A stretch of DNA of 63,444 nt, counting the filler, from Sluysia triapertura (lineage: Eukaryota), in the NCBI GenBank assembly GCA_046118255.1. It is 5 parts of 5 records of this genome, joined end to end, with 100 filler letters (N's around TTAATTAATTAA, not from the genome) between each part and the next. Parts side by side here need not be neighbours in the genome. Positions count along the whole stretch, not along the records: positions 1 to 14,925 come from JBJNIA010243991.1; 4 more parts are not named here. The stretch is one strand, 5' to 3'. This document shows, piece by piece, positions 1 through 14,925 of the stretch. How positions within the stretch are numbered: position 1 is the first letter of the stretch; each line of letters begins with the position of its first letter. Below the pieces are notes generated by a model. That model searched no databases, had not been told where the DNA came from, and saw only the letters and a list, made by a program, of their open reading frames with translations. A program made the position numbers and the translations under genes.

Positions 1-687
1 AATTGTTTAAAGGTTTTAGAAATCCAATTATGACATGATTTGAATTTAAAAAATATAAGGATCTAAGATTTCTTTTCCTGGATTTATTGTATAATGCTAT
101 TATAATTAGTTATATTTTACATATAAATAAAAAGATTTTTTTTTAGAGTGATATTGTTGAGTTTGGTCAGATGAGTATGTTTTTTTTTTATACATCGTAG
201 AAAGTAATATTTATTTATTTTGATGGTTTTATTGTGGTTTTTTTTAGGTTATTGATCGTATTGTTATAGGTTATTTAATAGATTATTTAAAAGAATGGGG
301 ATGATTGATTATTTAAGATTTTCTTTATTATTTATATTTATGTGTGATATGTGTTCATTGTTAGATGAAAATATATTTGATGTTTTCCCGAAAAGAAATC
401 TTAGATCCTTATATTTTTTAAATTCAAATCATGTCATAATTGGATTTCTAAAACCTTTAAACAATTACTTAAATATTATATAACAATATTTTATATTTAC
501 ATCAAAAAGTAAACATAACAATAAATTTAAATTTATTTATTTTGTTAAGTCTTAATTTTTATGAAATAAATGCATATAATTGTATCTATATTTTAAGTAA
601 TAATCTGATAAATTTCAATACCGAATTTTGTAACAAAAAAAAAACAATTTTGCCAACTAAAAACCCCATATTTAATACAACTACCAC
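1..687. repeat. Mitochondrial major non-coding (control) region with inverted repeats
   Basis: 1-77 is the exact reverse complement of 390-466. 567-687 is the reverse complement of 14806-14925 except for 1 nt in an A/T run. Confidence 0.9.
78..483 (+). pseudogene. nad5: Duplicated 3' part of nad5
   Basis: 149-448 is nearly identical to 14405-14709, with a T-run 2 nt shorter and one ATTT unit missing, giving TAA at 205-207. 78-148 is a diverged match to ~14325-14404. ORF 295..483 is this copy. Confidence 0.85.
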
Positions 688-721
688 TAATAGACGTATA
701 TAATTATCTCAGATGTAGAAA

Positions 722-788
722 TTTCATGTGGCAGATATAATGTGATAATTTTAAGCATTATTTAAGAGTTTAGTGAACTCCATGAGAA
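722..788 (+). tRNA. trnL2: tRNA-Leu(UAA)
   Basis: Acceptor tttcatg/catgaga; anticodon arm ataat-tt TAA gc-attat. Confidence 0.85.
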
Positions 789-1235
789 ATTTTATTATTA
801 TTATATATATATATAGTTGGTGGATTATTTGTTTATTTTAATTTTTTAAATTTTTATAAGTATATGGTTTTTGGGTTTTTAATATTTTGTAGTTTTTTAC
901 CTTATTATAGGGTATTGAGGGTTTTTTGTATGTATTTTTTTTGAATATTTATATATGGGATATTAGTTGGATTTTTAGTAAATAAAAATTCTAAAATTTT
1001 TCGTAAAACAACCTTGAAGGGTAGTTTAATTCTTTCGATTTTTATAATGTTTTTAGAAATAATTAGTTGATTTATACGTTTATACGTGATTTTTTTTCGG
1101 TTTTTTTTGAAAGTAAGTATTGGTCATTTTTTAATTCAAGAGGTAAGAGGTATTTTTATTTTTTTGGAGGTTTTTGTTGTTTTAATACATTTATGAATAA
1201 TGTATGTTTTATTAGAGGAATTTTCAGTACATTAA
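789..1235 (+). CDS. atp6: ATP synthase subunit a, short (~148 aa), ATT start
   Basis: Table 9 translation gives ...CSFLPYY...FLEIISWFIRLYVIFFRFFLNVSIGH...EEFSVH*, matching the ETIS..IRP....RL.AN..AGH motif. Confidence 0.85.
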
Positions 1236-1305
1236 AAACTTTAGTTTAAATTCAAAAACATAAATTTGTAAAATTTAAAATGAAATATAAAGTATTCAAG
1301 TTTTA
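1235..1305 (+). tRNA. trnY: tRNA-Tyr(GUA)
   Basis: aaaactt/aagtttt acceptor; taaat-tt GTA aa-attta. Confidence 0.85.
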
Positions 1306-1316
1306 AGATTTTTAAT

Positions 1317-1377
1317 TAAGACTTAGGTTATTAGACTATAAATTTTCAAAATTTAAGGTACTTTAAGGTAGTCTTAA
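1317..1377 (+). tRNA. trnW: tRNA-Trp(UCA)
   Basis: taagact/agtctta acceptor; taaat-tt TCA aa-attta. Confidence 0.85.
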
Positions 1378-1381
1378 AAAT

Positions 1382-3064
<1,683 letters not shown>

Positions 3065-3085
3065 GGTTTTTTGGTTATATTTTAG

Positions 3086-3154
3086 CTAAAAGGACTGCGA
3101 TAATTTGTAGGTTACTCCGATATAGTAAATTTTAAGTTTAATAACTTCTTTAGT
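3086..3154 (+). tRNA. trnI: tRNA-Ile(GAU)
   Basis: ctaaaag/tctttag acceptor, ctgc/gtag D-stem, ttact-cc GAT at-agtaa, agtt/aact T-stem. Confidence 0.8.
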
Positions 3155-3412
3155 AAAAAATATAAAGATATTATAATTGTTATTTTATTTTAAAGTGGTT
3201 GTAAACAGGTCCTAAAAAAAAAAAACTTTTTAAGCGGTTTTTAGTCAAAATAAGCCTTTTTTAAGGGGATTTTTTTTTGTAAAAAAATGTATATATATAA
3301 TATAAATTTTTTTTAAAGGCTATTTTAGATTTCAATAAATTATTTGATATCTTATGTATCAATTTTTGATTAAGTTATATTAATATTATATAAATATTAA
3401 AAAAAATATTTT
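3155..3412. other. Second mitochondrial non-coding region
   Basis: No long ORF or tRNA found between trnI and the nad4 ATG; contains a poly-A run, a TA run and short hairpins. Confidence 0.6.
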
Positions 3413-4690
3413 ATGTTTACGATTAGAGGTTTATTATTAGGGTGTATATTTTTTGATAAGTCTATATATTTAATATTTTTAATAGGGGGGTTTTTAGGAT
3501 TTTTTTTAAAATATGTTAGTTACACCGGTTTTATGAATATTAATAAATTCATTTTTAATATCAGATTATTATTTTATTGATTTTTTTTTTTGAGATTAAT
3601 ATTATTAATAATAATATATTATTTGACTGATGGGGGTTTTTTTTGGAAATGTTTGGTTTTTTGATTTTTTATTTTATTTCTTTTTTTGTATGGTAGGAAA
3701 AACTATTTGATTTTTTTTGTATTTTTTGAGTGTATTATGTTTATTAGATTTTATGTTATTTTTTATTTTGGTTTTAATCCAGAGCGTTTAGGTGCTGGTT
3801 ATTATTTTTTATGTTATTCATTATTAGGAACATTTCCTTTTTTAATTTATTTATTGTACTTAGAATGAAATTTTGTTACAAATATTTTTTGAAATTCGAT
3901 AATAATTACCAGGGGTATAATGATTGTTTTTTTTTTATTATTATTTATAATAAAGATACCCATTTATGGTTTTCATTTATGGTTACCAAAGGCTCACGTT
4001 GAAGCACCTATTTATGGTTCTATATTATTAGCTGGAATTTTAATGAAGTTGGGTTATTATGGTATAATTGTTTTTTTATTGAAAAAATCAATAAAATTTT
4101 TTTTTCAAAAAACATATAATTTGGGTTTGGTTTTTTTTATTATATTTAATTTTGGGGTTTTTATATCTGGTTTTATAGCTTTAAAGCAGTTTGATTTTAA
4201 GTCTTTTGTTGCTTATTCTTCAATAGTTCATATGAGAATATGTATATATATAATTTTTAAATTTAAATTTAAAAATTTTTTGGGTGTTATATATGTTGGT
4301 ATAGGACATGGATTTATTTCTTCTGGTATGTTTTTTTTAGTACAAATTTTTTATAAAGTTTTATTGACTCGTAATATATTGTTTTATTCATTTAATTCAT
4401 ATTGATCTTTGTTTGCGTTTTTGTTTTTTATAGTTGGAAATATGTGTTTACCTTTAGGTTTAAGTTTTTTGGGAGAAATGTTAGTATTAGAAAAATTTTT
4501 AACCAAATATAATTTTGTTTTAATTGTGTGTTATGTTTGTTTTTCATCTTTAATGTCTGTTTGAATTTTTGTGGTTTTGATTTCAAAAATGATTTTAATA
4601 AAAAGTTATCAATGTAATTTAAGTTTTGGGGATTTTATGTTATTGGTTTTTTATATATATATAATTGGATTTTTGTTTTTTTTTAATTAA
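3413..4690 (+). CDS. nad4: NADH dehydrogenase subunit 4
   Basis: ATG 3413; FGFNPERLGAG, KIPIYGFHLWLPKAHVEAPIYGSILLAGILMKLG, DFKSFVAYSSIVHM, GHGFISS; TAA 4688-4690. Confidence 0.95.
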
Positions 4691-4697
4691 AAATTAA

Positions 4698-4755
4698 TTT
4701 CCTAAAATTATATTACTTTTGTAAAGTAATAAATATATTTGAGTATATAGGAAAA
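4698..4755 (+). tRNA. trnT: tRNA-Thr(UGU), D-armless
   Basis: tttccta/taggaaa acceptor; ttact-tt TGT aa-agtaa; only a short unpaired linker replaces the D-arm. Confidence 0.75.
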
Positions 4756-4776
4756 CCAGGAGTTTTAAATTTTTAA

Positions 4777-5013
4777 GTGTATATTATTACACAAAAACAT
4801 TTAAGTTTTAAATTTAAAAAAAAATTAATTTTTAATTTATATTATTGGTTTTGATATTTTTGGGTTTTTTTATTTATTGTTTTTTTATTATTAGGTGTGA
4901 TAGTAATTCGTTCTGTTTTTCCTCGATTTCGTTATGATTTAGTTATGGAATTAATTTGGGGGGTTATTTATAGATTATTGATGTTTAGAGTATTATTTAT
5001 TATTTTAATTTAG
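4777..5013 (+). CDS. nad1: NADH dehydrogenase subunit 1, separate C-terminal part (nad1_b, ~78 aa; GTG 4777 or ATT 4828 start)
   Basis: ...FIVFLLLGVIVIRSVFPRFRYDLVMELIWGVIYSLLMFSVLFIILI* contains the ND1 R...PRFRYD.LM...W motif; TAG 5011-5013. Confidence 0.92.
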
Positions 5014-5018
5014 TTTGA

Positions 5019-5083
5019 TAACAAATAGTTTAAGAAAAAACGTTAGTATTACAAACTAAAAATAAATTTAGGTTTTTTGTTAT
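5019..5083 (+). tRNA. trnV: tRNA-Val(UAC)
   Basis: taacaaa/tttgtta acceptor; ttagt-at TAC aa-actaa. Confidence 0.85.
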
Positions 5084-5088
5084 TTTTA

Positions 5089-5154
5089 GATTTTGTAGCT
5101 TATATTTAAAGTGTGGTTTTGAAGAGACTAAGAAAATTTTTATGTTCAAAATCA
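5089..5154 (+). tRNA. trnF: tRNA-Phe(GAA)
   Basis: gattttg/caaaatc acceptor; tggtt-tt GAA ga-gacta. Confidence 0.85.
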
Positions 5155-5164
5155 GTTAATTTTT

Positions 5165-5229
5165 TGCAAGTTAAGTTAAATTAAACTAAGAGTTTCATGA
5201 ACTTTCAATCTCTATTTGGAGGCTTGTTG
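5165..5229 (+). tRNA. trnM: tRNA-Met(CAU)
   Basis: agtt/aact D-stem; agagt-tt CAT ga-acttt. Confidence 0.85.
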
Positions 5230-5235
5230 GGTTTT

Positions 5236-5303
5236 TCTTTATAGGTGTAAATATTGCATAAGAATTTTTGATATTCTTGGACTTTAAAAAATCAGATAAA
5301 GAA
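5236..5303 (+). tRNA. trnQ: tRNA-Gln(UUG)
   Basis: tctttat/ataaaga acceptor; agaat-tt TTG at-attct. Confidence 0.8.
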
Positions 5304-5305
5304 AA

Positions 5306-6223
5306 ATGGTTTTTTTTAAAGTATTATTTATGTGACAGGCTTGGGGGGTTTTTTTTATATTAATTTTAAATTTTTTAGTTTTTATTTTTAAGAGTTTTGT
5401 TTATATTATAATTATATATATAATATTAGATGTATATTTAATATACCTTTTAATTTCTAGTATGAAAAAAGATGTTAATTTAGGTATAGCTTTAATATTA
5501 TTAAAAGTTATTGGAATTTTTGGAGGGTTTTTTTTAGTATTTTTTGATTTTGTTAATTGGAATTATTTGTTTGTGAGTTTTTGTTTTTTTAAGATGGGAA
5601 TTTTCCCATTTCCTTTTATTTTTAAAGATATTTTTAAGAAGATGGGGGGGTATGAGTTTTTTTTGTTAATTATTTTAGGAAAGATTCCATTATTATATTT
5701 ATTAAGACTATTAAAAAAAACCATAGATTTAAATTTAATTATAATTATATTAAGGATTTTTGTTTTGTTTTTTTTAATAATTATTTTTAATAAAAATTTT
5801 TATTATTTACAGGATGTGATTTTTTTAACTTCTTCTGTAAATTCTTTTTTTTTGGGAGTTATTTTATTATTTGGAAATAATATAAGAACAATTTTTGTGT
5901 TTGGTTTTTGAATATTTTATGGGTTAATGGTTTATGTCTTTTTTCTTAAAAAAAAACTCAAGATGGTTGTTTTTTTAAATTTTTTAGGATTTCCCCCTAT
6001 GTTTATTTTTTTATTTAAGGTAGTGGTGACATTGGTATTTAATGTTAAAGGATTATGTTATTTAATGTTATTGTTGTTGTTATTAAGGTTTTTTGTATTG
6101 AGGGTTGTGTATAGTTATATGTTAATAAGATTAGTTTATGATTTGGAATTAAAGAATAATTGAATTATTATTTTTAGATATTATTTTTTAAGGATTGTGT
6201 GTTTTTTTTTAATTATTATATAA
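5306..6223 (+). CDS. nad2: NADH dehydrogenase subunit 2 (~305 aa)
   Basis: ATG 5306, continuous with TGA=Trp; FFKMGIFPF, LGKIPL, LTSSVN, LGFPPMFIFLFK motifs; TAA 6221-6223. Confidence 0.88.
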
Positions 6224-6989
6224 TAGTTAGAGGTTTTAGAAAATTTGATCTTAGTTTTAAATTTATTTATTTATTAAGTATATTAAGCAATATTATGTGT
6301 GGTTTTTTTTTGTATATTAAAAAATTGTGCAGATACGAATATTTGTCAAGAAATAAGTAAATTATTTGAACGAGCTATAATAAATTAATTTAGAAGTAGA
6401 AAAGAGTAGTGCCAGCACCTGCGGTTAGACTGATGAATTCTTTTAAATATTTTTTGGTGGGAAAAAAATTAAATTTTTTAATGGGTTTATTAGAAGTATA
6501 ATTTTTTAAAGTAAATACGTATGATATTAAAAAAATCGACAAAGAATTTAAGTTTTAATTAGCGACTAGAATTAGATACTCTATTAGTAAAAAAAAAACT
6601 TGTTAATTATTTATCCACATGAACTGAAAAGATTTGGCGGCTTAAGGAATTATTTCCGGGAAATGTGAGTTTTAAGAGAGGATCCGCTTAATGATTGAAC
6701 AATCTTTTTTACTAAAAATGGTATTAAGGTTAGTGTACGGTTGTAGGTAGATTAGACTTGATAAGTTTAATTTTTAAGGCAAATCGATGTGCTGCTATAG
6801 ATTGGTTATTTCTTGCATTGCAATTATTAAAAAAAGAATATAAAAACTTTTTTTTAAGTACTGGACAGTAAAAAAATAACAGAGTTGTTTTTTTGAAGGT
6901 GTTTATCTTTAGCGTACACACCGCCCGTCATCTCCCTTAGGGGAGTAAGTCGTAACATGGTAGTGTTAACTGAAGTTGATGCTAAGATA
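6224..6989 (+). rRNA. rrnS: Mitochondrial small subunit (12S) rRNA; boundaries approximate
   Basis: gtgccagcacctgcggtta, gaattagatactctatta, gtacacaccgcccgtca, gtaagtcgtaacatggta. Confidence 0.95.
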
Positions 6990-7057
6990 TTTTAATTAGT
7001 GTAATTTAGCATTCTTAATTTTCTATTAAGGGGTGATATATTGTATATCATTAAATA
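6990..7057 (+). tRNA. trnE: tRNA-Glu(UUC)
   Basis: cttaa-tt TTC ta-ttaag; gatat/atatc T-stem. Confidence 0.8.
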
Positions 7058-7306
7058 ATTATATTAATTTTAATAATTTTATTCCATTTTATAAGGTTTT
7101 TTTTAGGAAAGTTTCGTTTTTTACAGTTTGTTTTGGTGTTAGAATTTAGATTTTTGTTATTGATGTTTAGTATGGGATTTGTCAATGAGGGTTGTTTTTC
7201 AATTGTTATTTTTTTGTGTGGGTTTTTTGTTATAGAATCATGTTTAGCTATTGGAATTTTAGTATTTTTTAAACGTTTAAGGAAAAAATCAATGATTTTA
7301 ATTTAG
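7058..7306 (+). CDS. nad4L: NADH dehydrogenase subunit 4L (ATT start)
   Basis: FLQFVLVLEF ... FFVIESCLAIGILVFFNRLS; TAG 7304-7306. Confidence 0.85.
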   Translation: MILILIILFHFIRFFLGKFRFLQFVLVLEFRFLLLMFSMGFVNEGCFSIVIFLCGFFVIESCLAIGILVFFKRLRKKSMILI

Positions 7307-7307
7307 A

Positions 7308-7376
7308 ATTAAATTAGTTTAAAAAAAACGTTAACTTTGGGAGTTAAAGATCTTAAAAATTTTTTAAGTTTTGATA
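7308..7376 (+). tRNA. trnP: tRNA-Pro(UGG)
   Basis: ttaac-tt TGG ga-gttaa; gttt/aaac D-stem. Confidence 0.85.
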
Positions 7377-7381
7377 ATATA

Positions 7382-7435
7382 TCACTTTTTTAATAATTAT
7401 TTGCATTAATTTTTTACTTTTATAGTAGAAGTGGG
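7382..7435 (+). tRNA. trnA: tRNA-Ala(UGC), D-armless
   Basis: tcacttt/gaagtgg acceptor; aatta-tt TGC at-taatt; tact/agta T-stem. Confidence 0.75.
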
Positions 7436-7440
7436 TTAAA

Positions 7441-8247
7441 ATTAAGGATTTTAGTATAACTTGAAGAAAATGATCAGAATCTTTTTATATAAAGGAATGT
7501 ATGTGTGTTTTTTTAATTAATTTAAATTTAGTTTTTTTTGTTGTGTGTTTTTTTAATTATTTACATAATTTTGTTGGATTAAAGATAGTATTATTAAGGT
7601 TAATAGCTTTATTATATAAATTGTATGTGTTAGCAGAAACTTTTTTAAAATATAAAGTTTTGGGGTTTTTTAGTAAAAACAATACTCGAGTATTTTATTG
7701 AAGTTTTTGTTTGTTTATTTGAACAGAAGTATTATTATTTTTTGGATTTTTTTGAGGATTAGGGAAAAGATGAAATGAAGATTTTTTTTCAAAAAATCAT
7801 GTTTATAAACACAATATTGCTCATATAGGTGGACTTAGGATACCTTTTTTAGGATCTGTATTATTATTTATGTCTGCTATTAGATTATCTTATTCTTTAT
7901 TTGATTATAAGAAGATAGGTGAGTTTAATGTTTATTGGGTAATGGTAACTGTTTTATTAGGGGTTAGTTTTATTTGTTGTCAAATTTTAGAATATGGTTC
8001 TATTTGATTTTCTCATAATTGAGGCATATTTTCTTCTTTGTTTTATGGGATAACATTTTTACATGGTTTTCATGTATTTGTGGGGGTTTTGATGTTTTGT
8101 TATTTAATTATAGTTTTTTATATTAAAAATTTTAGTATTAATTCAACAAATAGTATAGTTTTTTTTGCAATTAGATTATATTGACATTTTGTTGATGTTG
8201 TTTGGATTTTTGTTTATAGATTAGAATATTTAATTTTGCCATTATAA
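7441..8247 (+). CDS. cox3: Cytochrome c oxidase subunit 3 (start uncertain: ATT 7441 or ATG 7501)
   Basis: LFIWTEVLLFFGFFW, CQILEY, FYGITFLHGFHV, YWHFVDVVWIFVY; TAA 8245-8247. Confidence 0.93.
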
Positions 8248-8316
8248 ATTATTAGAATATGAATTAGTATATTAAATTTCCAATTTAAAAGACTTTAAAA
8301 ACAAAAAGTAATAATA
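8248..8316 (+). tRNA. trnG: tRNA-Gly(UCC)
   Basis: attatta/taataat acceptor; ttaaa-tt TCC aa-tttaa. Confidence 0.85.
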
Positions 8317-8374
8317 TAGAAAAAAAATCAAGGTAGTTTCGGCCTATTTGTAGGATTTATTGTTCCTTTTCTAG
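8317..8374 (+). tRNA. trnR: tRNA-Arg(UCG), D-armless
   Basis: tagaaaa/ttttcta acceptor; ggtag-tt TCG gc-ctatt; gga/tcc T-stem. Confidence 0.8.
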
Positions 8375-9358
8375 TATTTTAAAGATTTAATATGTTTATT
8401 AAGATGAATATTACTTTTTGAATTACGGTTTTTTGATTATATTAATTTTATTAGATTAATATTTTTGTACGAATTTAGGAGATTTAGTTTTTTTTTAGGG
8501 AAAAGTGTTGAAATTTTTTTTTTGAAAAAAAAATTAGAGTTGAAATGATAGTCGTTCTTAGAGTTCTTATATTTATGTCTTAATTTCTTAAGGAAGATTA
8601 AGTTTATTGTTGAATAAGGAATATAAATTTCTGTTGTTAATTAATTATTAGAATAGTAAATTTTTCTGTTAAAGGGAATAAATTTATTATAAATATTTTA
8701 TTTGTGTATTTTATTATGAATAATAGTGAAATATTTTTTTTAATATAAAAAAATAAGTATATAAAGATAAAAAAAATTATTAAAATCATTAACCCACTGT
8801 TTATTAAAAACATTTCTTTTTTTGTAAAAAGTATTTCCTGCTTAAAGATATTTATTAAATATTTATTAGCTGCAGTATAGATGACTGCAATAAAGTAGCA
8901 TAATTATTTGTCTTTTCATTGGGGGCTTGTTTGAATGGGATAAGGAGTTAATTTGGTTTTTTTTTGTAATATGAATTTTTTTTTTAGATTAAAACTATCT
9001 AAAATATAATTTAAGACAAAAAGACCCTAGTAGAGCTTTAAGAATTATATTCTTTTTTTTGGGGAAAAATGCTTTTTTTATAGAAGTAAGGATTATTGAA
9101 AAGTTTCCTTAGGGTTAACAGGGGAAAGTAAATTTGGAGTTCAAATCGAAGTTTTTCTTCCTACCTCGATGTTGAATCAGAGTTAAGTTAAGGGGTAGAT
9201 TCTTTATTCTTTTGCCTGTTCGGCAATTAAAACTTTACGTGATTTGAGTTTAAACCGGTGTAAATCAGGTTGGTTTTTATCTAAAAGTTTCATGTTTTTA
9301 GTACGCAAGGATTTTAATATAGGAATGGTTTTTGGTTGTTTATATTTAGGTATTAATA
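8375..9358 (+). rRNA. rrnL: Mitochondrial large subunit (16S) rRNA; boundaries approximate
   Basis: gacaaaaagaccctag, acctcgatgttgaatc, tacgtgatttgagtttaaaccgg, sarcin-ricin loop agtacgcaagga. Confidence 0.95.
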
Positions 9359-10075
9359 TTGATTTTTTTATTAACTATTTTAACGTTATTAGTTATTATT
9401 ATGTTTTATACTATGTTGGAGCGAAAGATAATGTCTTATATACAAATTCGTAAGGGACCAAAAAAGGTGGGGTTTTTAGGTTTATTAACTCCTATCTTTG
9501 ATAGTTTTAAGTTATTTTTAAAGATTTTTTATAAGCCCACGATGAGTAATAAAATTATGTTTTGTGTTTTTCCTTTTTTTCTTATAATATTATTGTTTGT
9601 ATTGTTTTATATATTACCTTTTAAAAAAGGATTTAGTTTTTTTGAGTTTGGATTTTTAATTTATTTTAGTATTTCTGGGTTTGTTGTAATATTTTTTATA
9701 TTATCATCTTTTGGGAGTAATAGAAAGTATACTTTAATAAGAACTTTACGTATATCGGCAGGGGTAATTAGATATGAAGTTGGGGTTTTTTTAATAGGTT
9801 ATTTTTTAGTAAGTATTATTATGGGATATGATTTTTTTGAGATTTTTTCAATGAGATTTAAGATAGTGTTTTTTTTACCTTATGTTTTTTTGTTATGAAT
9901 TATTTTTATATTAATAGATTTACAACGTAGACCTTTTGATTTTGCTGAGGGTGAAAGAGAATTGGTTTCTGGAGTTAATGTTGAGTATGGTGGTTTAGGG
10001 TTTGCATCTTTTTATTTAGCTGAGTATGGAAAAATTATTTGGTTTTCAATAGTTAGGAGGTTTTTTTTTATCTAA
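9359..10075 (+). CDS. nad1: NADH dehydrogenase subunit 1, N-terminal part (nad1_a, 238 aa, TTG start)
   Basis: [66 protein letters not shown] with TAA 10073-10075; lacks the PRFRYD segment. Confidence 0.95.
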
Positions 10076-10076
10076 T

Positions 10077-10147
10077 ATTAATGTGGCAGAAAAATATAAT
10101 GCAAAGATTTTAGGTGTCTTATATAGAAATTGATTTTCTCATTAAGA
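10077..10147 (+). tRNA. trnL1: tRNA-Leu(UAG)
   Basis: aagat-tt TAG gt-gtctt; tggcaga D-arm. Confidence 0.85.
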
Positions 10148-10216
10148 TAATAAAGTTTATTATGAATATTTGGCTGTTAACCAAAAGGAGCAAAAATTTT
10201 ATATTTGCTATTATTT
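10146..10216 (+). tRNA. trnN: tRNA-Asn(GUU)
   Basis: tttgg-ct GTT aa-ccaaa; gcaaa/tttgc T-stem. Confidence 0.88.
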
Positions 10217-10273
10217 GTAAATTATTAAGGTTGTTTTCTAAACAGTTATTGTGGTTTGTAAAACCGATTTACT
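10217..10273 (+). tRNA. trnS1: tRNA-Ser(UCU), D-armless
   Basis: gtaaatt/gatttac acceptor; gttgt-tt TCT aa-acagt; ggttt/aaacc T-stem. Confidence 0.8.
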
Positions 10274-10276
10274 TAT

Positions 10277-11374
10277 ATGGGTAAAAAAGTTCGTTCTTTA
10301 TTAGTTACTCCTTTACCTAGGAAATTAAATGTATTTTTTAAAGTTGGTAGGATATTGGGTTTTTTTTTGTTTTTGCAGATATTTACTGGTTTAGTATTAT
10401 CATGTTTTTTTAATAGGGGCATGCCTTTTGAAAGAATAGAGAAAATTAAACGTGAAATTGTAAAAGGAGATTTATTTCGGTTGGTACACTCTGTTGGTGC
10501 TAGATTTTATTTTTTTTTTTTGTATATACATTTATTTCGTGGATTATTTTTGCGAAGTTTTTATTTAAGGAGAAAGTTATGGTATTCAGGTTGTATTATA
10601 TTGATAATTAGAGAGTTGGTGGGGTTTTTAGGTTATGTATTACCATATGGGAAAATGTCTTTTTGGGGTGCTTCTGTAATTGTTAAATTTTTAAGTGTTT
10701 TACCTTGAGGTAAAAATTTAATTAATATTATTTTAGGTGGGAGATCTGTAGGATTGGTTACAGTCAGTCGATTTTTTTCTTTACATTATTTATTGCCTTT
10801 TTTGATTTTTGGATTTGTTATTGTTCATATTATATTTTTACATAAGCAAGGATCAAGAAATCCAATGGGGTTTAAATCAAATAAAAAGATGTTATCTTTT
10901 TTTCCTTTTTTTGGGTATTCTGATTTTGTAGGTATTATTTTAGTTATGATTGTATTTTTTTTTGTTTTAAAATATTATTCTTATGTTTTTTTTGATTATA
11001 ATAATTTTGTTGAATCAAATTCTTTAGTTACTCCTTTACATATACAACCAGAGTGATATTTTTTACCGCATTATGCAGTACTTCGTAGGTGTAGTTCAAA
11101 GGTAGGGGGGATTTTATTTTTGATATTTTTTACTTTTTGAGTTTTTTTTTTGCCTACACTGAGTAAGGCTTTTTTTTTTAAGAAGTTAGTGATTTATAAA
11201 AAGAAGTTGTTTATAGTAAATTTTGTTGTTTTAGTAATTGTTTGATTATTATTAATATGAGTTGGTTCTAAGCCTGTTGAGGTTTATTATTTAGATTTAA
11301 GGTTATTACTATTATTGATTTTTTTATTAAATTTTTTATTATTATTGATTTTAAAAAGTGATAATGAGCATTAG
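10277..11374 (+). CDS. cob: Cytochrome b
   Basis: [51 protein letters not shown]; TAG 11372-11374. Confidence 0.97.
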
Positions 11375-11394
11375 TAATTAGATATATATGTTAA

Positions 11395-11469
11395 GAGTTT
11401 TTAGTTTAAAAAAAAACACTAATTTGTGGAGTTAGAAATGAAATAATAATAATGTATTTTCAAAATTTA
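11395..11469 (+). tRNA. trnH: tRNA-His(GUG)
   Basis: ctaat-tt GTG ga-gttag; gagtttt/aaaattt acceptor. Confidence 0.85.
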
Positions 11470-11474
11470 AGTTG

Positions 11475-12230
11475 ATGAAGTATTTTTTTAGAAATCCAAG
11501 ATTTTTTATTTCCTTATCAGATAGATATCATGCTTTAGCAAAAAATTTGTTATGGGGGTTTTGGATTATGGTGTGTTTTTTGGTGGTTTTTTTTTTGTTT
11601 GTTTGATATATATCAATATTTTTGTCAAATTATGATGGATTAGGGGGTTTATATATTAATTATAAGGATGATGATGAGTTAGAGATGATTTGAACTTTAA
11701 TTCCTGTTTTCGTTGTGTTCTTTTTGGCTATACCAAATATGTTTGTTTTGGGTTCTTTAACTAGAAAATGTGGATATAAAAAATTATTTCATTTGAAGGG
11801 TAATATTTTTAATGTTTCATTAGTTGGTAAACAATGATTTTGGCAGAGTAGGTGATATAAAAATATTTCTAATGTTAAAAGATGTTTAAATTATTTTGGG
11901 GGTTTTTATGATGATAATAATCGTATAAAGTCTTATAGTCAAGATTATTCCTTGTTAAAATTAGTTTATGGTAAATTTCCATTAAAAGATGTTATTGGTG
12001 GAATTTTTTTAAAGTCTTTAAAAAAATCTTATGTGATAATTAAATTAGTAGGGAGAAGAAATGATGTTATTCATTCTATTGGTTGTGATTTATGAGGAAC
12101 ATTTGATGTTTGTCCTGGTCGACAAAATCAAATTTTATCAAATGTTCCTTTAGGTTCATATAGGGGGCGGTGTATGGAATTGTGTGGGATAGGTCATAGT
12201 CATATGCCATTTTCATTAAATGTTATTTAG
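11475..12230 (+). CDS. cox2: Cytochrome c oxidase subunit 2 (ATG 11475 or TTG 11472)
   Basis: ELEMIWTLIP, VGNQWFW, DVIHS, DVCPGR, CuA motif GRCMELCGIGHSHMP; TAG 12228-12230. Confidence 0.93.
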
Positions 12231-12557
12231 ATGTTGTTTAGTTTTTTATTTATTTTATTAGTAATATATATATTTATATGTAGTAATTTTTTTTGAAACC
12301 GGGAAAAATTAAGTTGTTACGAATGTGGTTTTGATTTTAAGGATTGTTCTCGTTTACCTTTTTCTTTACGTTTTTTTACTATTTTGTTGGTTTTTTTATT
12401 ATTTGATATTGAAATAGTTTTTTTGTTACAATTTCCTTTGGAGGTGTTATCAAGTAAATATATATTAGAAAGGTATTATGTTTATTTAGGGTTTATTATT
12501 ATTATTTTTTTTTCAACCCTACTAGAGTGATTTAAAGGCTTATTAAGTTGACTTTAA
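12231..12557 (+). CDS. nad3: NADH dehydrogenase subunit 3
   Basis: [35 protein letters not shown]. Confidence 0.95.
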
Positions 12558-12560
12558 AAA

Positions 12561-12992
12561 ATGGTTATTAAATATTTTATTGTTTTATTATGTATGATTT
12601 CTTTTTTAAAAAGATTTTTTGCTTGATTTAGTTTATTTATAATTAGGTTATTAATATGTATTTTTAGTTTAATTTTAAAATTATATTGAGTTTTTTTCGT
12701 GATTTTTTTTTTATATATAAGAGGATTGTCGGTTTTTTTTGTATTTTTTATATCTTTAGAAAATAATCCTTATTTATATTTTGGTGGTTTTTTCAGAATT
12801 GTATTAGGTTTTTTTCTTTTGTTGAATTATAAAATAATTTCTAAAAAGAATTCTTGTTTTTCTCAGTATTTAACTTTTAGTGATAAATTTATTTGTATGT
12901 ATATATTATTGGGTTTTTTAATTTTATGTTTATTGGTTTTAAATAAGATTTTTGGTAGTTCTTCTTTTAGTTATCGTATAATTATTTTTTAA
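12561..12992 (+). CDS. nad6: NADH dehydrogenase subunit 6
   Basis: ATG 12561; W..FVIFFLYISGLSVFFVFFISL motif; hydrophobic, ~143 aa. Confidence 0.85.
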
Positions 12993-12999
12993 TGTAATT

Positions 13000-13069
13000 A
13001 TATTTTTAGCTTACATTAAGAGCATTGAATTCTTAATTCAAAAGGAGATTTATGAAAAATCAGAATATT
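13000..13069 (+). tRNA. trnK: tRNA-Lys(CUU)
   Basis: ttgaa-tt CTT aa-ttcaa; gctt/gagc D-stem. Confidence 0.88.
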
Positions 13070-13073
13070 ATAA

Positions 13074-13142
13074 GAAATCTTAGTTTATTATAAAATGTAA
13101 ATTTGCAAAATTTAAGAAAAAACCAAAGTTTTTTAGATTTTT
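13074..13142 (+). tRNA. trnC: tRNA-Cys(GCA)
   Basis: taaat-tt GCA aa-attta; gaaatct/agatttt acceptor. Confidence 0.82.
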
Positions 13143-13144
13143 AA

Positions 13145-13215
13145 TAAGAGATAGTTTAAAAAAAAACATAAATTTGTCGTATTTAAAAAGACACACTTAA
13201 AATTGTCTCTCTTAG
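13145..13215 (+). tRNA. trnD: tRNA-Asp(GUC)
   Basis: taagaga/tctctta acceptor; taaat-tt GTC gt-attta. Confidence 0.88.
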
Positions 13216-14743
13216 TTGTTTGTTAATTGGTTAATTTTTGTTATTTTATTAAGTTTAATGTTTGTTAAGGATAAATTTTTATGTTTTATAATAACCCCAA
13301 GCCTTAGCAAAAAATTTTTTAATTGTTGTTTAGTAATAAAATTATCAAGATATATGTTTTTGTTTTTTTTGTTAGTAATAGTTTTTTCTGTTTTTAATTT
13401 TTCTGTAATATATTTAAATAATTATAATTTTTTATTATTATTAAGAAGTTTTGTAGGTTCAATGTGCTTGTTAATTGTTTCTTTTGATTTATTTAGTTTT
13501 ATAATTGGTTGGGATTGATTGGGTGTAATTAGATTTTATTTAATATTATATTATGTTTATTCAGGGGATAGAATTTATGGGGGTTTAAAGACTGTTATAT
13601 ATAATCGATTTGGGGATGGTTTATTAATATTGGTGATAAGTTTATTTTTAAATAAGTATTTGTTTTATTTTAAGATATTAGATGTAGTTTTTATAATAAT
13701 GGTTATATTGGTTTTTGGTTTATTTACAAAGAGTTCTATTTATCCTTTTTGTAGATGATTACCTTTAGCAATGGCGGCACCTACTCCTGTTTCTGCTTTA
13801 GTTCATTCATCAACTTTAGTAACAGCAGGATTATATATAATTTTTCAATTGAATAAAGTTGAAAGTTTAAGTTATATATATTTGATTTTTGGATTTTTAA
13901 CAGGAGTTTATGCAGGGATAAAAGGAATGCTTTCAAATGATTTGAAGAAGATTATTGCATATTCTACTTTAAGTCAGCTTGGGTTAATGTTATTTTTGTT
14001 AGGTTTATCTGGAAATAAAATAATAATTTTATTTTATATATTAATACATGGTTCTTTTAAGGCATTATTATTTATTGGTGTTGGGTATATTTTATTAAGA
14101 AAATCCCATAATCAAGATTTGCGTTTATTGAGTAGTAAACATGTTAAATATTTAGTAATGTATAGGGTTTTTTTTTCTTTAATTATTTTGTCTGGTTTTC
14201 CTTTTTTAGCTGTATTTTATGTTAAGGACATGATTTTTTTTTCTTTAAGTATTTTAAATATTATATTTGGATTATTTATAGTTATAATGATTTTTATTTC
14301 AGAATTATATTCTATGCAATTGATTTCTAGATTGTTGAAAAATAATAATATCAGAATTAGTTACAATTTTGACATAGATATAAGGATCTTTAGAGTAATA
14401 TTATTGATATTGTTGAGTTTGGTCAGATGAGTATGTTTTTTTTTTTTATACATCGTAGAAAGTAATATTTATTTATTTATTTTGATGGTTTTATTGTGGT
14501 TTTTTTTAGGTTATTGATCGTATTGTTATAGGTTATTTAATAGATTATTTAAAAGAATGGGGATGATTGATTATTTAAGATTTTCTTTATTATTTATATT
14601 TATGTGTGATATGTGTTCATTGTTAGATGAAAATATATTTGATGTTTTCCCGAAAAGAAATCTTAGATCCTTATATTTTTTAAATTCAAATCATGTCATA
14701 ATTGGATTTTTGTTTTTTTGAATTTTTCTAGTTTTGGTTATTT
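13216..14743 (+). CDS. nad5: NADH dehydrogenase subunit 5 (TTG start; probable incomplete T stop before trnS2, otherwise TAG at 14788-14790)
   Basis: [71 protein letters not shown]. Confidence 0.95.
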
Positions 14744-14796
14744 GTGCTTTTAATTATATGATTTGAAATCATAGTTTAGAGTTATTCTAGAGCACT
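14744..14796 (+). tRNA. trnS2: tRNA-Ser(UGA), D-armless
   Basis: gtgcttt/agagcac acceptor; tatga-tt TGA aa-tcata. Confidence 0.82.
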
Positions 14797-14799
14797 TAC

Positions 14800-14925
14800 A
14801 TTTGTGTGGTAGTTGTATTAAATATGGGGTTTTTAGTTGGCAAAATTGTTTTTTTTTGTTACAAAATTCGGTATTGAAATTTATCAGATTATTACTTAAA
14901 ATATAGATACAATTATATGCATTTA
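14800..14925 (+). CDS. Small ORF after trnS2, candidate divergent atp8 (runs off contig)
   Basis: ICVVVVLNMGFLVGNIVFFCYNIRYWNLSDYYLNYSYNYMHL, open to contig end; hydrophobic N-half, polar C-half; no MPQL motif. Confidence 0.3.

What the first reader, a model, noticed from the sequence alone, without database searches (positions are those of the whole stretch)
4777..10075. Animal mitochondrial nad1 split into two independent genes in reversed order
Seen: the nad1 ORF at 9359 ends with a real TAA at 10073-10075, right after [18 protein letters not shown], and is followed by trnL1. It is 238 aa, about 70-80 aa short. The missing C-terminus (IRSVFPRFRYDLVMELIW plus a final hydrophobic helix) is an intact ORF at 4777-5013 between trnT and trnV, about 4.3 kb upstream, with its own GTG/ATT start and TAG. 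I see no intron sequence beside either half. Known: ND1 is normally one ~300-320 aa gene in animals, and ciliates have a nad1_a/nad1_b fission that likewise separates the PRFRYD-bearing C-terminus. Inference: a fission in the loop between helices 6 and 7 gives a two-chain ND1, convergent with ciliates. Annotation pipelines would probably call nad1 truncated and miss nad1_b.
Basis: partly seen in the sequence, partly recalled or inferred. Interest (0 to 1): 0.9.

Follow-up and report, generated by a model that had tools for sequence, protein, structure and literature searches.

The report
Flatworm mitochondrial nad1 split in two
In this flatworm (marine-planarian-like) mitochondrial genome the complex I gene nad1 is broken into two separate genes 4.3 kb apart that together cover the whole protein. 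Such a fission of nad1 is known in ciliates; the papers I found describe only one split mitochondrial protein gene in animals, cox2 in some wasps.

Summary
ORF 9350/9359-10075 (nad1a, TAA stop abutting trnL1) covers Pfam NADHdh positions 4-238. ORF 4777-5013 (nad1b, between trnT and trnV) covers positions 250-297, including the FPRFRYD motif. Against the planarian Amaga ND1 (297 aa) the two pieces align to residues 1-240 and 241-295.

No other ORF in six frames resembles nad1, and no other flatworm-type nad1 exists in the 619-Mb assembly. Decayed nuclear copies of mtDNA in that assembly (65-85% identity) keep both junctions, so this is not a misassembly and it is old.

The nearest relative found, the published nad1 of the marine triclad Obrimoposthia wandeli, is annotated at 242 aa and ends at exactly the homologous residue. 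The fission is therefore probably shared, and nad1b was overlooked there.

There is no room for intron halves: 0 and 18 nt separate the pieces from flanking tRNAs. The break lies in the TM6/TM7 loop, the same place as in Tetrahymena ND1/ND1b (PDB 7tgh).

Best reading: a true gene fission giving two tRNA-punctuated mRNAs and a two-chain ND1. This would be the first split complex I gene I can find described in an animal.

The parts
9350..10075 (+). nad1a: the N-terminal ~240 codons of nad1 (TM1-TM6). The frame is open from 9350, with candidate starts ATA 9356 and TTG 9359. The TAA stop is at 10073-10075.
   Evidence: Pfam NADHdh 4-238. Flatworm ND1 profile positions 3-239, E 7e-69. Aligns to Amaga ND1 residues 1-240 and to O. 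wandeli nad1 over its whole 242 aa.
4777..5013 (+). nad1b: the C-terminal part of nad1 (loop, TM7, FPRFRYD, TM8). GTG at 4777, TAG at 5011-5013. The well-conserved coding core is about 4828-5010.
   Evidence: Pfam NADHdh 250-297. Flatworm ND1 profile 244-296, E 7e-8. Aligns to Amaga ND1 241-295, mammalian ND1 ~256-305 and Tetrahymena ND1b. The codon-position pattern of substitutions resembles that of nad4.
4698..4758 (+). trnT(tgt), D-armless: the 5' punctuation of the nad1b mRNA, with an 18-nt spacer before the GTG.
   Evidence: ARAGORN -mt. Retained in the nuclear mtDNA copies.
5018..5084 (+). trnV(tac): the 3' punctuation of the nad1b mRNA, 4 nt after the TAG.
   Evidence: ARAGORN. Rfam tRNA 5019-5083, 29.9 bits, above the gathering score.
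10076..10148 (+). trnL1(tag), directly abutting the nad1a stop. It is followed by trnN, trnS1 and cob.
   Evidence: ARAGORN. The same junction is present in nuclear copies C251486 and C230023.
3401..4690 (+). nad4, the gene upstream of trnT and nad1b. It is in a different reading frame from nad1b and ends with TAA at 4688-4690.
   Evidence: ORF list and sequence.
8317..9349 (+). Presumed rrnL, upstream of nad1a.
   Evidence: Inference. There is no ORF here. The stretch at about 9228-9260 resembles the universal 16S 3' primer site (16Sbr, recalled from memory). Rfam gave no hit.

Best explanation
This is a true, evolutionarily old fission of mitochondrial nad1 into two free-standing genes on the same strand of a flatworm mitogenome. 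On nad1 similarity the organism looks like a marine triclad.

nad1a encodes TM1-TM6 and stops at the start of the TM6/TM7 loop. nad1b encodes the rest of that loop, TM7, the FPRFRYD loop and TM8. It sits 4.3 kb upstream, between trnT and trnV.

Inferred mechanism:
- The polycistronic transcript is cut at the flanking tRNAs (tRNA punctuation). This releases a ~260-nt nad1b mRNA and a separate nad1a mRNA.
- Each mRNA is translated from its own start codon.
- The two hydrophobic chains assemble side by side in the membrane arm of complex I to rebuild a normal ND1 fold, as the solved Tetrahymena ND1/ND1b pair does.

The origin is most simply a duplication covering nad1 followed by complementary loss of the two halves, then further gene-order scrambling. 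That part is inference only.
For: Shown:
1. Complementary, non-overlapping homology. Pfam positions 4-238 versus 250-297. Amaga ND1 residues 1-240 versus 241-295. Flatworm profile positions 3-239 versus 244-296, with no third hit among 208 ORFs.
2. Both ORFs are intact, each with its own start and stop, and both are flanked by tRNAs.
3. Both junctions recur in independent decayed nuclear copies of mtDNA in the same assembly. nad4-trnT-nad1b-trnV is found in C256298 (85%), C231638, C53965 and C40071 (72%). nad1a-trnL1-trnN-trnS1-cob is found in C251486 (74%) and C230023 (65%). None joins nad1a to nad1b.
4. The only flatworm-type nad1 in the 619-Mb assembly is this one.
5. O. wandeli nad1 (the best hit, 48% identity) is 242 aa and ends at the homologous residue, 14 residues after EYG in both. 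The two group together in a nad1 tree with 90/89 support. Continenticolan planarians have an intact nad1 of 296-302 aa.
6. Constraint on nad1b. It is 35-39% identical to the ND1 C-termini of other planarians, against 39-45% for nad1a, despite a very long branch. Differences between the mt copy and the nuclear copies are lowest at codon position 2 and highest at position 3, as in the nad4 control. Sixteen changes assigned to the mt lineage are 44% synonymous against 21% expected at random (p 0.03). Thirty-four changes specific to nuclear copies are 24% synonymous.
7. The same split site works in a solved complex I (7tgh chains ND1 and ND1b).
Against: - There is no RNA or protein evidence.
- The nad1b Pfam score (23.8 bits) is below the family cut-off for the 52-aa piece.
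- The selection signal from nuclear copies is weak. Counts are small, the contrast between the mt lineage and the nuclear copies is not significant (p 0.1-0.2), and the nuclear copies may not be independent.
- Codons 1-17 of nad1b show indels and no coding pattern against the nuclear copies, so the start is uncertain.
The shared fission rests on the annotated nad1a end alone.
- The contig's ends around the non-coding region are not cleanly circular.
Confidence: 0.77

Rival explanations
1. nad1b is a non-functional relic of a rearrangement. ND1 either works truncated after TM6 or is complemented by something else.
For: The first ~17 codons lack a coding signature. The selection test from nuclear copies has low power. 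No expression data could be obtained.
Against: The frame is intact and FPRFRYD is fully conserved in a genome whose nad1a branch is 2.6 substitutions per site. Position-2 sparing resembles that of nad4. TM7-TM8 and the PRFRYD loop are present in every solved ND1/NuoH matched. No other source of this segment was seen in the assembly apart from decayed nuclear mtDNA copies.
Confidence: 0.08
2. Assembly artefact: a short-read misjoin, or a chimera with nuclear mtDNA copies, cut a normal contiguous nad1.
For: The assembly is highly fragmented (263,945 contigs). The contig ends carry duplicated and inverted nad5 and non-coding pieces. Many nuclear mtDNA copies exist.
Against: Both junctions are reproduced in several independent, divergent nuclear copies, and none shows nad1a joined to nad1b. 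An independently sequenced species has nad1 ending at the same residue. Both halves are neatly bounded by tRNAs with proper stop codons.
Confidence: 0.03
3. The two halves are joined at the RNA level (trans-splicing or another ligation) to give a single ND1, as in plant mitochondrial nad1.
For: None found here. It is considered only because plant nad1 is trans-spliced (papers listed).
Against: nad1a ends in a TAA that abuts trnL1. Only 18 nt separate trnT from the nad1b GTG. There is therefore no room for group I or II intron halves. Rfam found no intron family in the window at E<=0.01. nad1b carries its own upstream stop plus GTG, and these are conserved in all four nuclear copies.
Confidence: 0.04
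4. The mitochondrial nad1b is redundant because a nuclear copy supplies the C-terminal piece. For example, the C256298 copy has an open 61-codon frame and TGG in place of the mitochondrial TGA.
For: C256298:10852-11004 has no stop and is 76% identical at the protein level. The mitochondrial TGA codon reads TGG there.
Against: That copy is embedded in a collinear nad4-trnT-nad1b-trnV-trnF block, a typical nuclear mtDNA insertion. It has indels relative to the mitochondrial frame upstream of the core, and no start or targeting sequence was seen. Its copy-specific changes look neutral: 3 synonymous and 6 non-synonymous.
Confidence: 0.03

Closest known systems
Ciliate nad1_a / nad1_b (for example Tetrahymena thermophila; complex I structure PDB 7tgh, chains ND1 of 284 aa and ND1b of 59 aa)
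   Same: - Two free-standing mitochondrial genes give a two-chain ND1.
- The small piece carries TM7, the PRFRYD-type loop and TM8. The nad1b core aligns to residues 4-50 of the 59-aa ND1b.
- The break is after TM6.
   Different: - The origin is independent: an animal versus an alveolate.
- Here both genes are on one strand and are bounded by tRNAs (the animal punctuation model).
- Tetrahymena ND1a runs ~25 residues further than nad1a, while here the loop residues sit on nad1b.
- The match to ND1b is weak (E 0.11).
cox2a / cox2b fission in scoliid wasps (Campsomeris/Dielis; PMC5374615, PMC9895450)
   Same: A canonical animal mitochondrial protein gene is split into complementary genes that both stay in the mtDNA. 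That case was described as the first of its kind in animals.
   Different: - A different gene and respiratory complex.
- There the halves remain adjacent, separated by a 3-kb ORF cluster with a putative nuclease.
- Here the halves are 4.3 kb apart among ordinary genes, with no inserted element.
- There the discrete transcripts were shown by RACE. Here nothing is shown at the RNA level.
Obrimoposthia wandeli mitochondrial nad1 as deposited (242 aa; mitogenome MK962607/NC_050050, PMC7706869)
   Same: - Best hit to nad1a (48% identity).
- It ends at the homologous residue.
- It groups with the window in a nad1 tree.
   Different: It is annotated as a normal nad1 among '12 PCGs', with no mention of truncation or of a second piece. 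Whether a nad1b ORF exists there could not be checked with these tools.
Trans-spliced nad1 of land-plant mitochondria (group II introns)
   Same: nad1 coding pieces are scattered around the mitochondrial genome.
   Different: Plants join the exons at the RNA level through intron halves. Here no intron sequence can fit, and each piece has its own start and stop.

Membership tests
ND1 / NuoH (Pfam PF00146 NADHdh) | Match to the family profile over its length | tested here: met
   nad1a covers positions 4-238 (103 and 57 bits for its two table-11 pieces). nad1b covers 250-297 (23.8 bits, below the 27-bit cut-off on its own). Together they cover 4-297 of 298. The custom flatworm profile gives 3-239 and 244-296.
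ND1 / NuoH (Pfam PF00146 NADHdh) | Conserved PRFRYD loop between TM7 and TM8 | tested here: met
   FPRFRYD at 4918-4938 aligns with the same motif in human, bovine and other solved ND1 chains.
Split nad1 (nad1_a/nad1_b type gene fission) | Two separate ORFs, each with its own start and stop, non-adjacent | tested here: met
   GTG 4777 to TAG 5013, and TTG 9359 (or 9350) to TAA 10075. They are 4.3 kb apart, with nad2, rrnS, nad4L, cox3 and rrnL between them.
Split nad1 (nad1_a/nad1_b type gene fission) | Complementary coverage with no intact copy elsewhere in the organism | tested here: met
   The whole-assembly Pfam search found no other flatworm-type nad1. The other nad1 contigs have 13-31% C against 6% here, and the three compared (C197277, C127006, C138509) are 36-49% identical over their partly short alignments.
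Split nad1 (nad1_a/nad1_b type gene fission) | Break in the TM6/TM7 loop as in ciliates | tested here: met
   nad1a ends near bovine residue 242 and the nad1b core starts near 256. The Tetrahymena ND1b chain aligns to the nad1b core.
Split nad1 (nad1_a/nad1_b type gene fission) | Separate mature transcripts and two polypeptides present in complex I | not testable with these tools
The complex prediction gave no verdict.
Trans-spliced gene (group I/II intron halves) | Intron half sequences flanking the exon ends | tested here: not met
   0 nt lie between the nad1a stop and trnL1, and 18 nt between trnT and the nad1b GTG. No intron family was found by Rfam at E<=0.01.
Pseudogene or nuclear mtDNA fragment | Frame disruptions, neutral substitution pattern, non-mitochondrial flanks | tested here: not met
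   nad1b is intact. It lies inside the 14.9-kb mitochondrial contig that carries the full gene set. Its core shows position-2 sparing like nad4. The true nuclear copies have indels, stops and A=T-type flanks.

The most novel reading that the evidence does not exclude
nad1 fission is a shared derived trait of marine triclads (Maricola), or a large part of them. It arose independently of ciliates at the very same TM6/TM7 loop. That would make it the first split complex I gene in Metazoa. It would also mean that published Maricola mitogenomes carry an unannotated 13th reading frame (nad1b) and a mislabelled truncated nad1.
Probability: 0.6. Interest if true: 0.72.

Novelty: new member of a known kind. 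Interest (0 to 1): 0.64.

Why it matters
Bilaterian mitochondrial genomes are treated as having a fixed set of undivided protein genes. The papers I found name only one fission of such a gene in animals, cox2 in scoliid wasps.

- A split nad1 would be the first for complex I in animals. It would be a clean case of convergence with ciliates at the same loop, which suggests that the TM6/TM7 loop of ND1 is a structurally permissive cut site.
- It gives a ready phylogenetic marker for marine planarians.
- It flags an annotation error that automatic pipelines such as MITOS reproduce: a truncated nad1 and a missed nad1b.
- It offers a natural system for asking how two very hydrophobic fragments made in the matrix find each other during complex I assembly.

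Tried and rejected
As a result no reads could be laid and read laying was not used.

Searches for relatives of nad1b (52-aa table-11 piece):
- The word-indexed protein search found no candidate.
- The exhaustive HMMER search of 1.84 billion representatives gave 0 hits at E<=0.001. The query is too short for that database.
- JGI metagenome contigs gave none.

Searches for related mitogenomes:
- A cox1 piece found nothing closer than ~59-71% identity.
- A viral-contig scan with nad1a found none.
- A second metagenome scan with a nad1a/O. wandeli alignment found none.
- The O. wandeli protein is not on record in the contig index.
- Contig L030, reached through P0056, proved to be an ordinary planarian-type mitogenome piece with an intact 302-aa nad1. 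It served only as a comparator.
- Supplements of two papers hold no nad1 lengths.

Other attempts:
- Complex prediction on nad1a (two pieces) plus nad1b scored 0.21, below the mark. That is no verdict, neither for nor against.
- Rfam did not detect the rRNAs or most tRNAs of this divergent genome.

Left alone on purpose:
- Contigs C193707, C219470, C81841 and C103398 carry full or partial nad1 with a C-rich, vertebrate-like composition. They could be food, host or human contamination. I did not translate, compare or search them further.

Rejected ideas:
- nad1b as a C-terminal extension of nad4. It is in a different frame, with a TAA and trnT between.
- nad1b as the missing atp8. It carries the ND1 motif.

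Full report
WHAT THE WINDOW IS

Places 1-14925 form one contig (C243991) of a 619-Mb assembly with 263,945 contigs. The contig is an animal mitochondrial genome:
- Base composition is 47% T and 6% C.
- All genes lie on the + strand. ORFs for cox1-3, cob, nad2-6 and nad4L stand out under codes 5 and 9, and a 153-codon ORF at 774-1232 is the only candidate for atp6 (no Pfam hit). No atp8 is present.
- ARAGORN in mitochondrial mode finds tRNAs.
- AAA must be read as Asn to restore the conserved RKGPN motif of ND1, which points to code 9 and a flatworm.

The closest nad1 in the protein database is that of the marine triclad Obrimoposthia wandeli (48% identity). Land and freshwater planarians follow (Amaga 46%, Schmidtea 40%). 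In a small nad1 tree the window groups with O. wandeli (90/89 support) on a very long branch.

A 2025 paper notes that the only public marine-planarian assembly, Sluysia triapertura, is short-read and highly fragmented. That would fit this assembly, but I could not verify the species.

THE OBSERVATION

It is correct to the base.

nad1a:
- It ends ...[18 protein letters not shown], with ATC at 10070-10072 and TAA at 10073-10075.
- trnL(tag) starts at 10076, followed by trnN, trnS1 and cob.

nad1b:
- TAA at 4774-4776 closes the frame upstream.
- GTG at 4777 opens 78 codons that end with TAG at 5011-5013.
- It lies between trnT (4698-4758) and trnV (5018-5084). Rfam also calls trnV above its gathering score.
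- nad4 ends with TAA at 4688-4690 in another frame, so nad1b is not a tail of nad4.

COMPLEMENTARITY

- Pfam NADHdh (298 positions) is covered at 4-169 and 183-238 by nad1a, whose two pieces are separated by one TGA = Trp codon. It is covered at 250-297 by the nad1b core.
- By local BLASTP, nad1a aligns to residues 1-240 of the 297-aa Amaga ND1. nad1b residues 11-74 align to residues 241-295.
- I built a profile from eight full-length flatworm-type ND1 proteins and searched all 208 six-frame ORFs of 30 aa or more. It hits only these two: positions 3-239 (E 7e-69) and 244-296 (E 7e-8). The next ORF scores E 0.1.
- ORF length by itself means little on this T-rich strand, where spurious 80-110-codon frames occur. 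The evidence is the homology.

IS IT AN ARTEFACT?

The assembly itself supplies an independent check. It holds many decayed nuclear copies of mtDNA, embedded in A=T-type nuclear sequence.

Four copies carry the nad4 3' end, trnT, nad1b and trnV in the same order as the window. All four keep the TAA-GTG that opens nad1b:
- C256298, 85% identical
- C231638, 80-83% identical
- C53965, 77% identical
- C40071, 72% identical

Two copies carry the nad1a 3' end followed directly by trnL1, trnN, trnS1 and cob:
- C251486, 74% identical
- C230023, 65% identical

No contig joins nad1a to nad1b. Both junctions therefore existed in the mitochondrial genome at several past times. The split is real and old.

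The whole-assembly Pfam search found no other flatworm-type nad1. The other nad1-bearing contigs have 13-31% C against 6% here.
- The three I compared (C197277, C127006, C138509) are only 36-49% identical to nad1a over alignments of 41-233 residues, so they belong to other organisms.
- Four C-rich, vertebrate-like contigs (C193707, C219470, C81841, C103398) could be food, host or human contamination. I left them alone beyond their base composition.

IS IT SHARED WITH OTHER SPECIES?

The deposited O. wandeli nad1 is 242 aa and ends ...GEYGNIIFISFLTILLWF. That is 14 residues after EYG, exactly as in the window. The BLASTP register (6-236 versus 7-237) puts both termini in the same alignment column.

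Continenticolan planarians and a metagenomic planarian-type contig have an intact nad1 of 296-302 aa.

That mitogenome was sequenced independently and re-assembled in 2025 at 99.6% identity. Neither that paper nor the Miroplana and Paucumara papers mentions a short nad1 or a second piece. All report '12 PCGs'.

The fission is thus probably ancestral to at least these two lineages, and nad1b has gone unannotated. I could not reach the DNA of those genomes to look for nad1b.

IS nad1b UNDER CONSTRAINT?

- Although the window's nad1a branch is 2.6 substitutions per site, nad1b keeps FPRFRYD intact. It is 35-39% identical to the C-termini of other planarian ND1, against 39-45% for nad1a.
- Differences between the mitochondrial copy and each nuclear copy in the core 4828-5010 run 0.15-0.21, 0.03-0.10 and 0.21-0.31 at codon positions 1, 2 and 3. 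The nad4 control in the same copies gives 0.12-0.16, 0.05-0.10 and 0.27-0.30.
- I polarised changes using the nuclear copies. Sixteen changes fall on the mitochondrial lineage: positions 6/2/8, 7 synonymous and 9 non-synonymous. That is 44% synonymous against 21% expected at random, p 0.03.
- Thirty-four changes specific to nuclear copies look neutral: positions 12/13/9, 24% synonymous.
- The direct contrast between the two sets is not significant (p 0.1-0.2), so this evidence is suggestive only.
- Codons 1-17 (4777-4827) show indels and no coding pattern against the nuclear copies. The true start may be further in, for example ATT 4828, or this polar segment may evolve freely.

HOW IT MOST LIKELY WORKS

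What the sequence shows:
- Each half has its own start and stop and is bounded by tRNAs.
- No nucleotides separate the nad1a stop from trnL1, and only 18 separate trnT from the nad1b GTG. Group I or II intron halves cannot be present, and Rfam finds none.

What is inferred:
- From the established tRNA-punctuation model of animal mitochondrial RNA processing, two separate mRNAs and two polypeptides are made.

Structural mapping:
- nad1a ends near bovine ND1 residue 242, the end of TM6.
- The nad1b core starts near residue 256, at TM7.
- In the solved Tetrahymena complex I (7tgh), ND1 is likewise two chains of 284 and 59 aa. The small chain aligns to the nad1b core.
- A two-chain ND1 cut at this loop is therefore known to assemble into a working complex I.

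The origin (duplication of nad1 followed by complementary loss, then the gene-order scrambling typical of Maricola) is my inference. No remnant of it is visible.

COMPARISON WITH WHAT IS KNOWN

- Split nad1 (nad1_a/nad1_b) is a textbook feature of ciliate mitogenomes.
- Plant nad1 is scattered but is trans-spliced.
- In animals, the papers I could search describe a single fission of a canonical mitochondrial protein gene, cox2 in scoliid wasps. It was called the first such case in 2017 and was still the only one cited in 2023.
- Searches for nad1a/nad1b, for split nad1 in flatworms and for gene fission in Metazoa returned nothing on animals. The library lacks most subscription journals, so this is not proof of novelty.
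- I file the finding as a new, convergent member of a known kind: mitochondrial gene fission into complementary genes, and specifically the nad1 a/b type.

VERDICT

- The remaining uncertainty concerns expression (two mRNAs, two chains in complex I), the exact start of nad1b, and how widely the split occurs.
- The complex prediction gave no verdict and counts neither way.

Noticed in passing
window 1-700 and 14400-14925: The contig does not close as a clean circle. Places 147-447 repeat 14402-14709 (the nad5 3' part, with small indels near T runs). Places 567-687 are the reverse complement of 14806-14925. Places 20-77 are the reverse complement of 14652-14709. This is either a real inverted or duplicated structure in the non-coding region or assembler noise at the contig ends.
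   Followed up: partly
G000 contigs C256298, C231638, C40071, C53965, C251486, C230023, C85227, C161216, C11721: There are many nuclear copies of mtDNA of different ages (65-93% identity to the mitogenome). They are usable as molecular fossils of past mitochondrial sequence and gene order. C161216 (535 nt) is 92.6% identical to 5184-5721 and could be a young insertion or a variant mitotype.
   Followed up: partly
L027 = G000:C230023:4326-7064: The oldest nuclear copy (65% identity) runs from the nad1a 3' end through trnL1, trnN, trnS1 and cob. After about 600 unmatched bases it continues with the atp6 3' end, trnY, trnW and cox1. This skips cox2, nad3, nad6 and nad5 of the present order. It could reflect an internal deletion, a composite insertion or an older gene order.
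   Followed up: no
G000 contigs C193707, C219470, C197277, C81841, C103398, C127006, C138509: Other nad1-bearing contigs have quite different base composition. Several have an intact ND1 of 309-320 aa with TGA codons. They are mitochondria of other organisms in the sample (food, host or contaminants). The C-rich, vertebrate-like ones were deliberately not examined further.
   Followed up: partly
window 3253-3322 and 4698-4758: ARAGORN calls two trnT(tgt) and no trnR. One of the two may be mis-assigned or remoulded. Several other calls fall inside genes and are probably false (2120-2174, 3912-3961, 8770-8839, 9034-9094, 14630-14680).
   Followed up: no
window 774-1232: By elimination, the only candidate for atp6 is a 153-codon ORF. 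Its table-11 pieces give no Pfam hit, so it is either very divergent or shortened.
   Followed up: no
G000:C256298:10852-11004: The nuclear copy of nad1b has an open 61-codon frame, and the mitochondrial TGA (Trp) reads TGG. It is most likely a chance-intact insertion, but it is worth a look for nuclear expression.
   Followed up: partly
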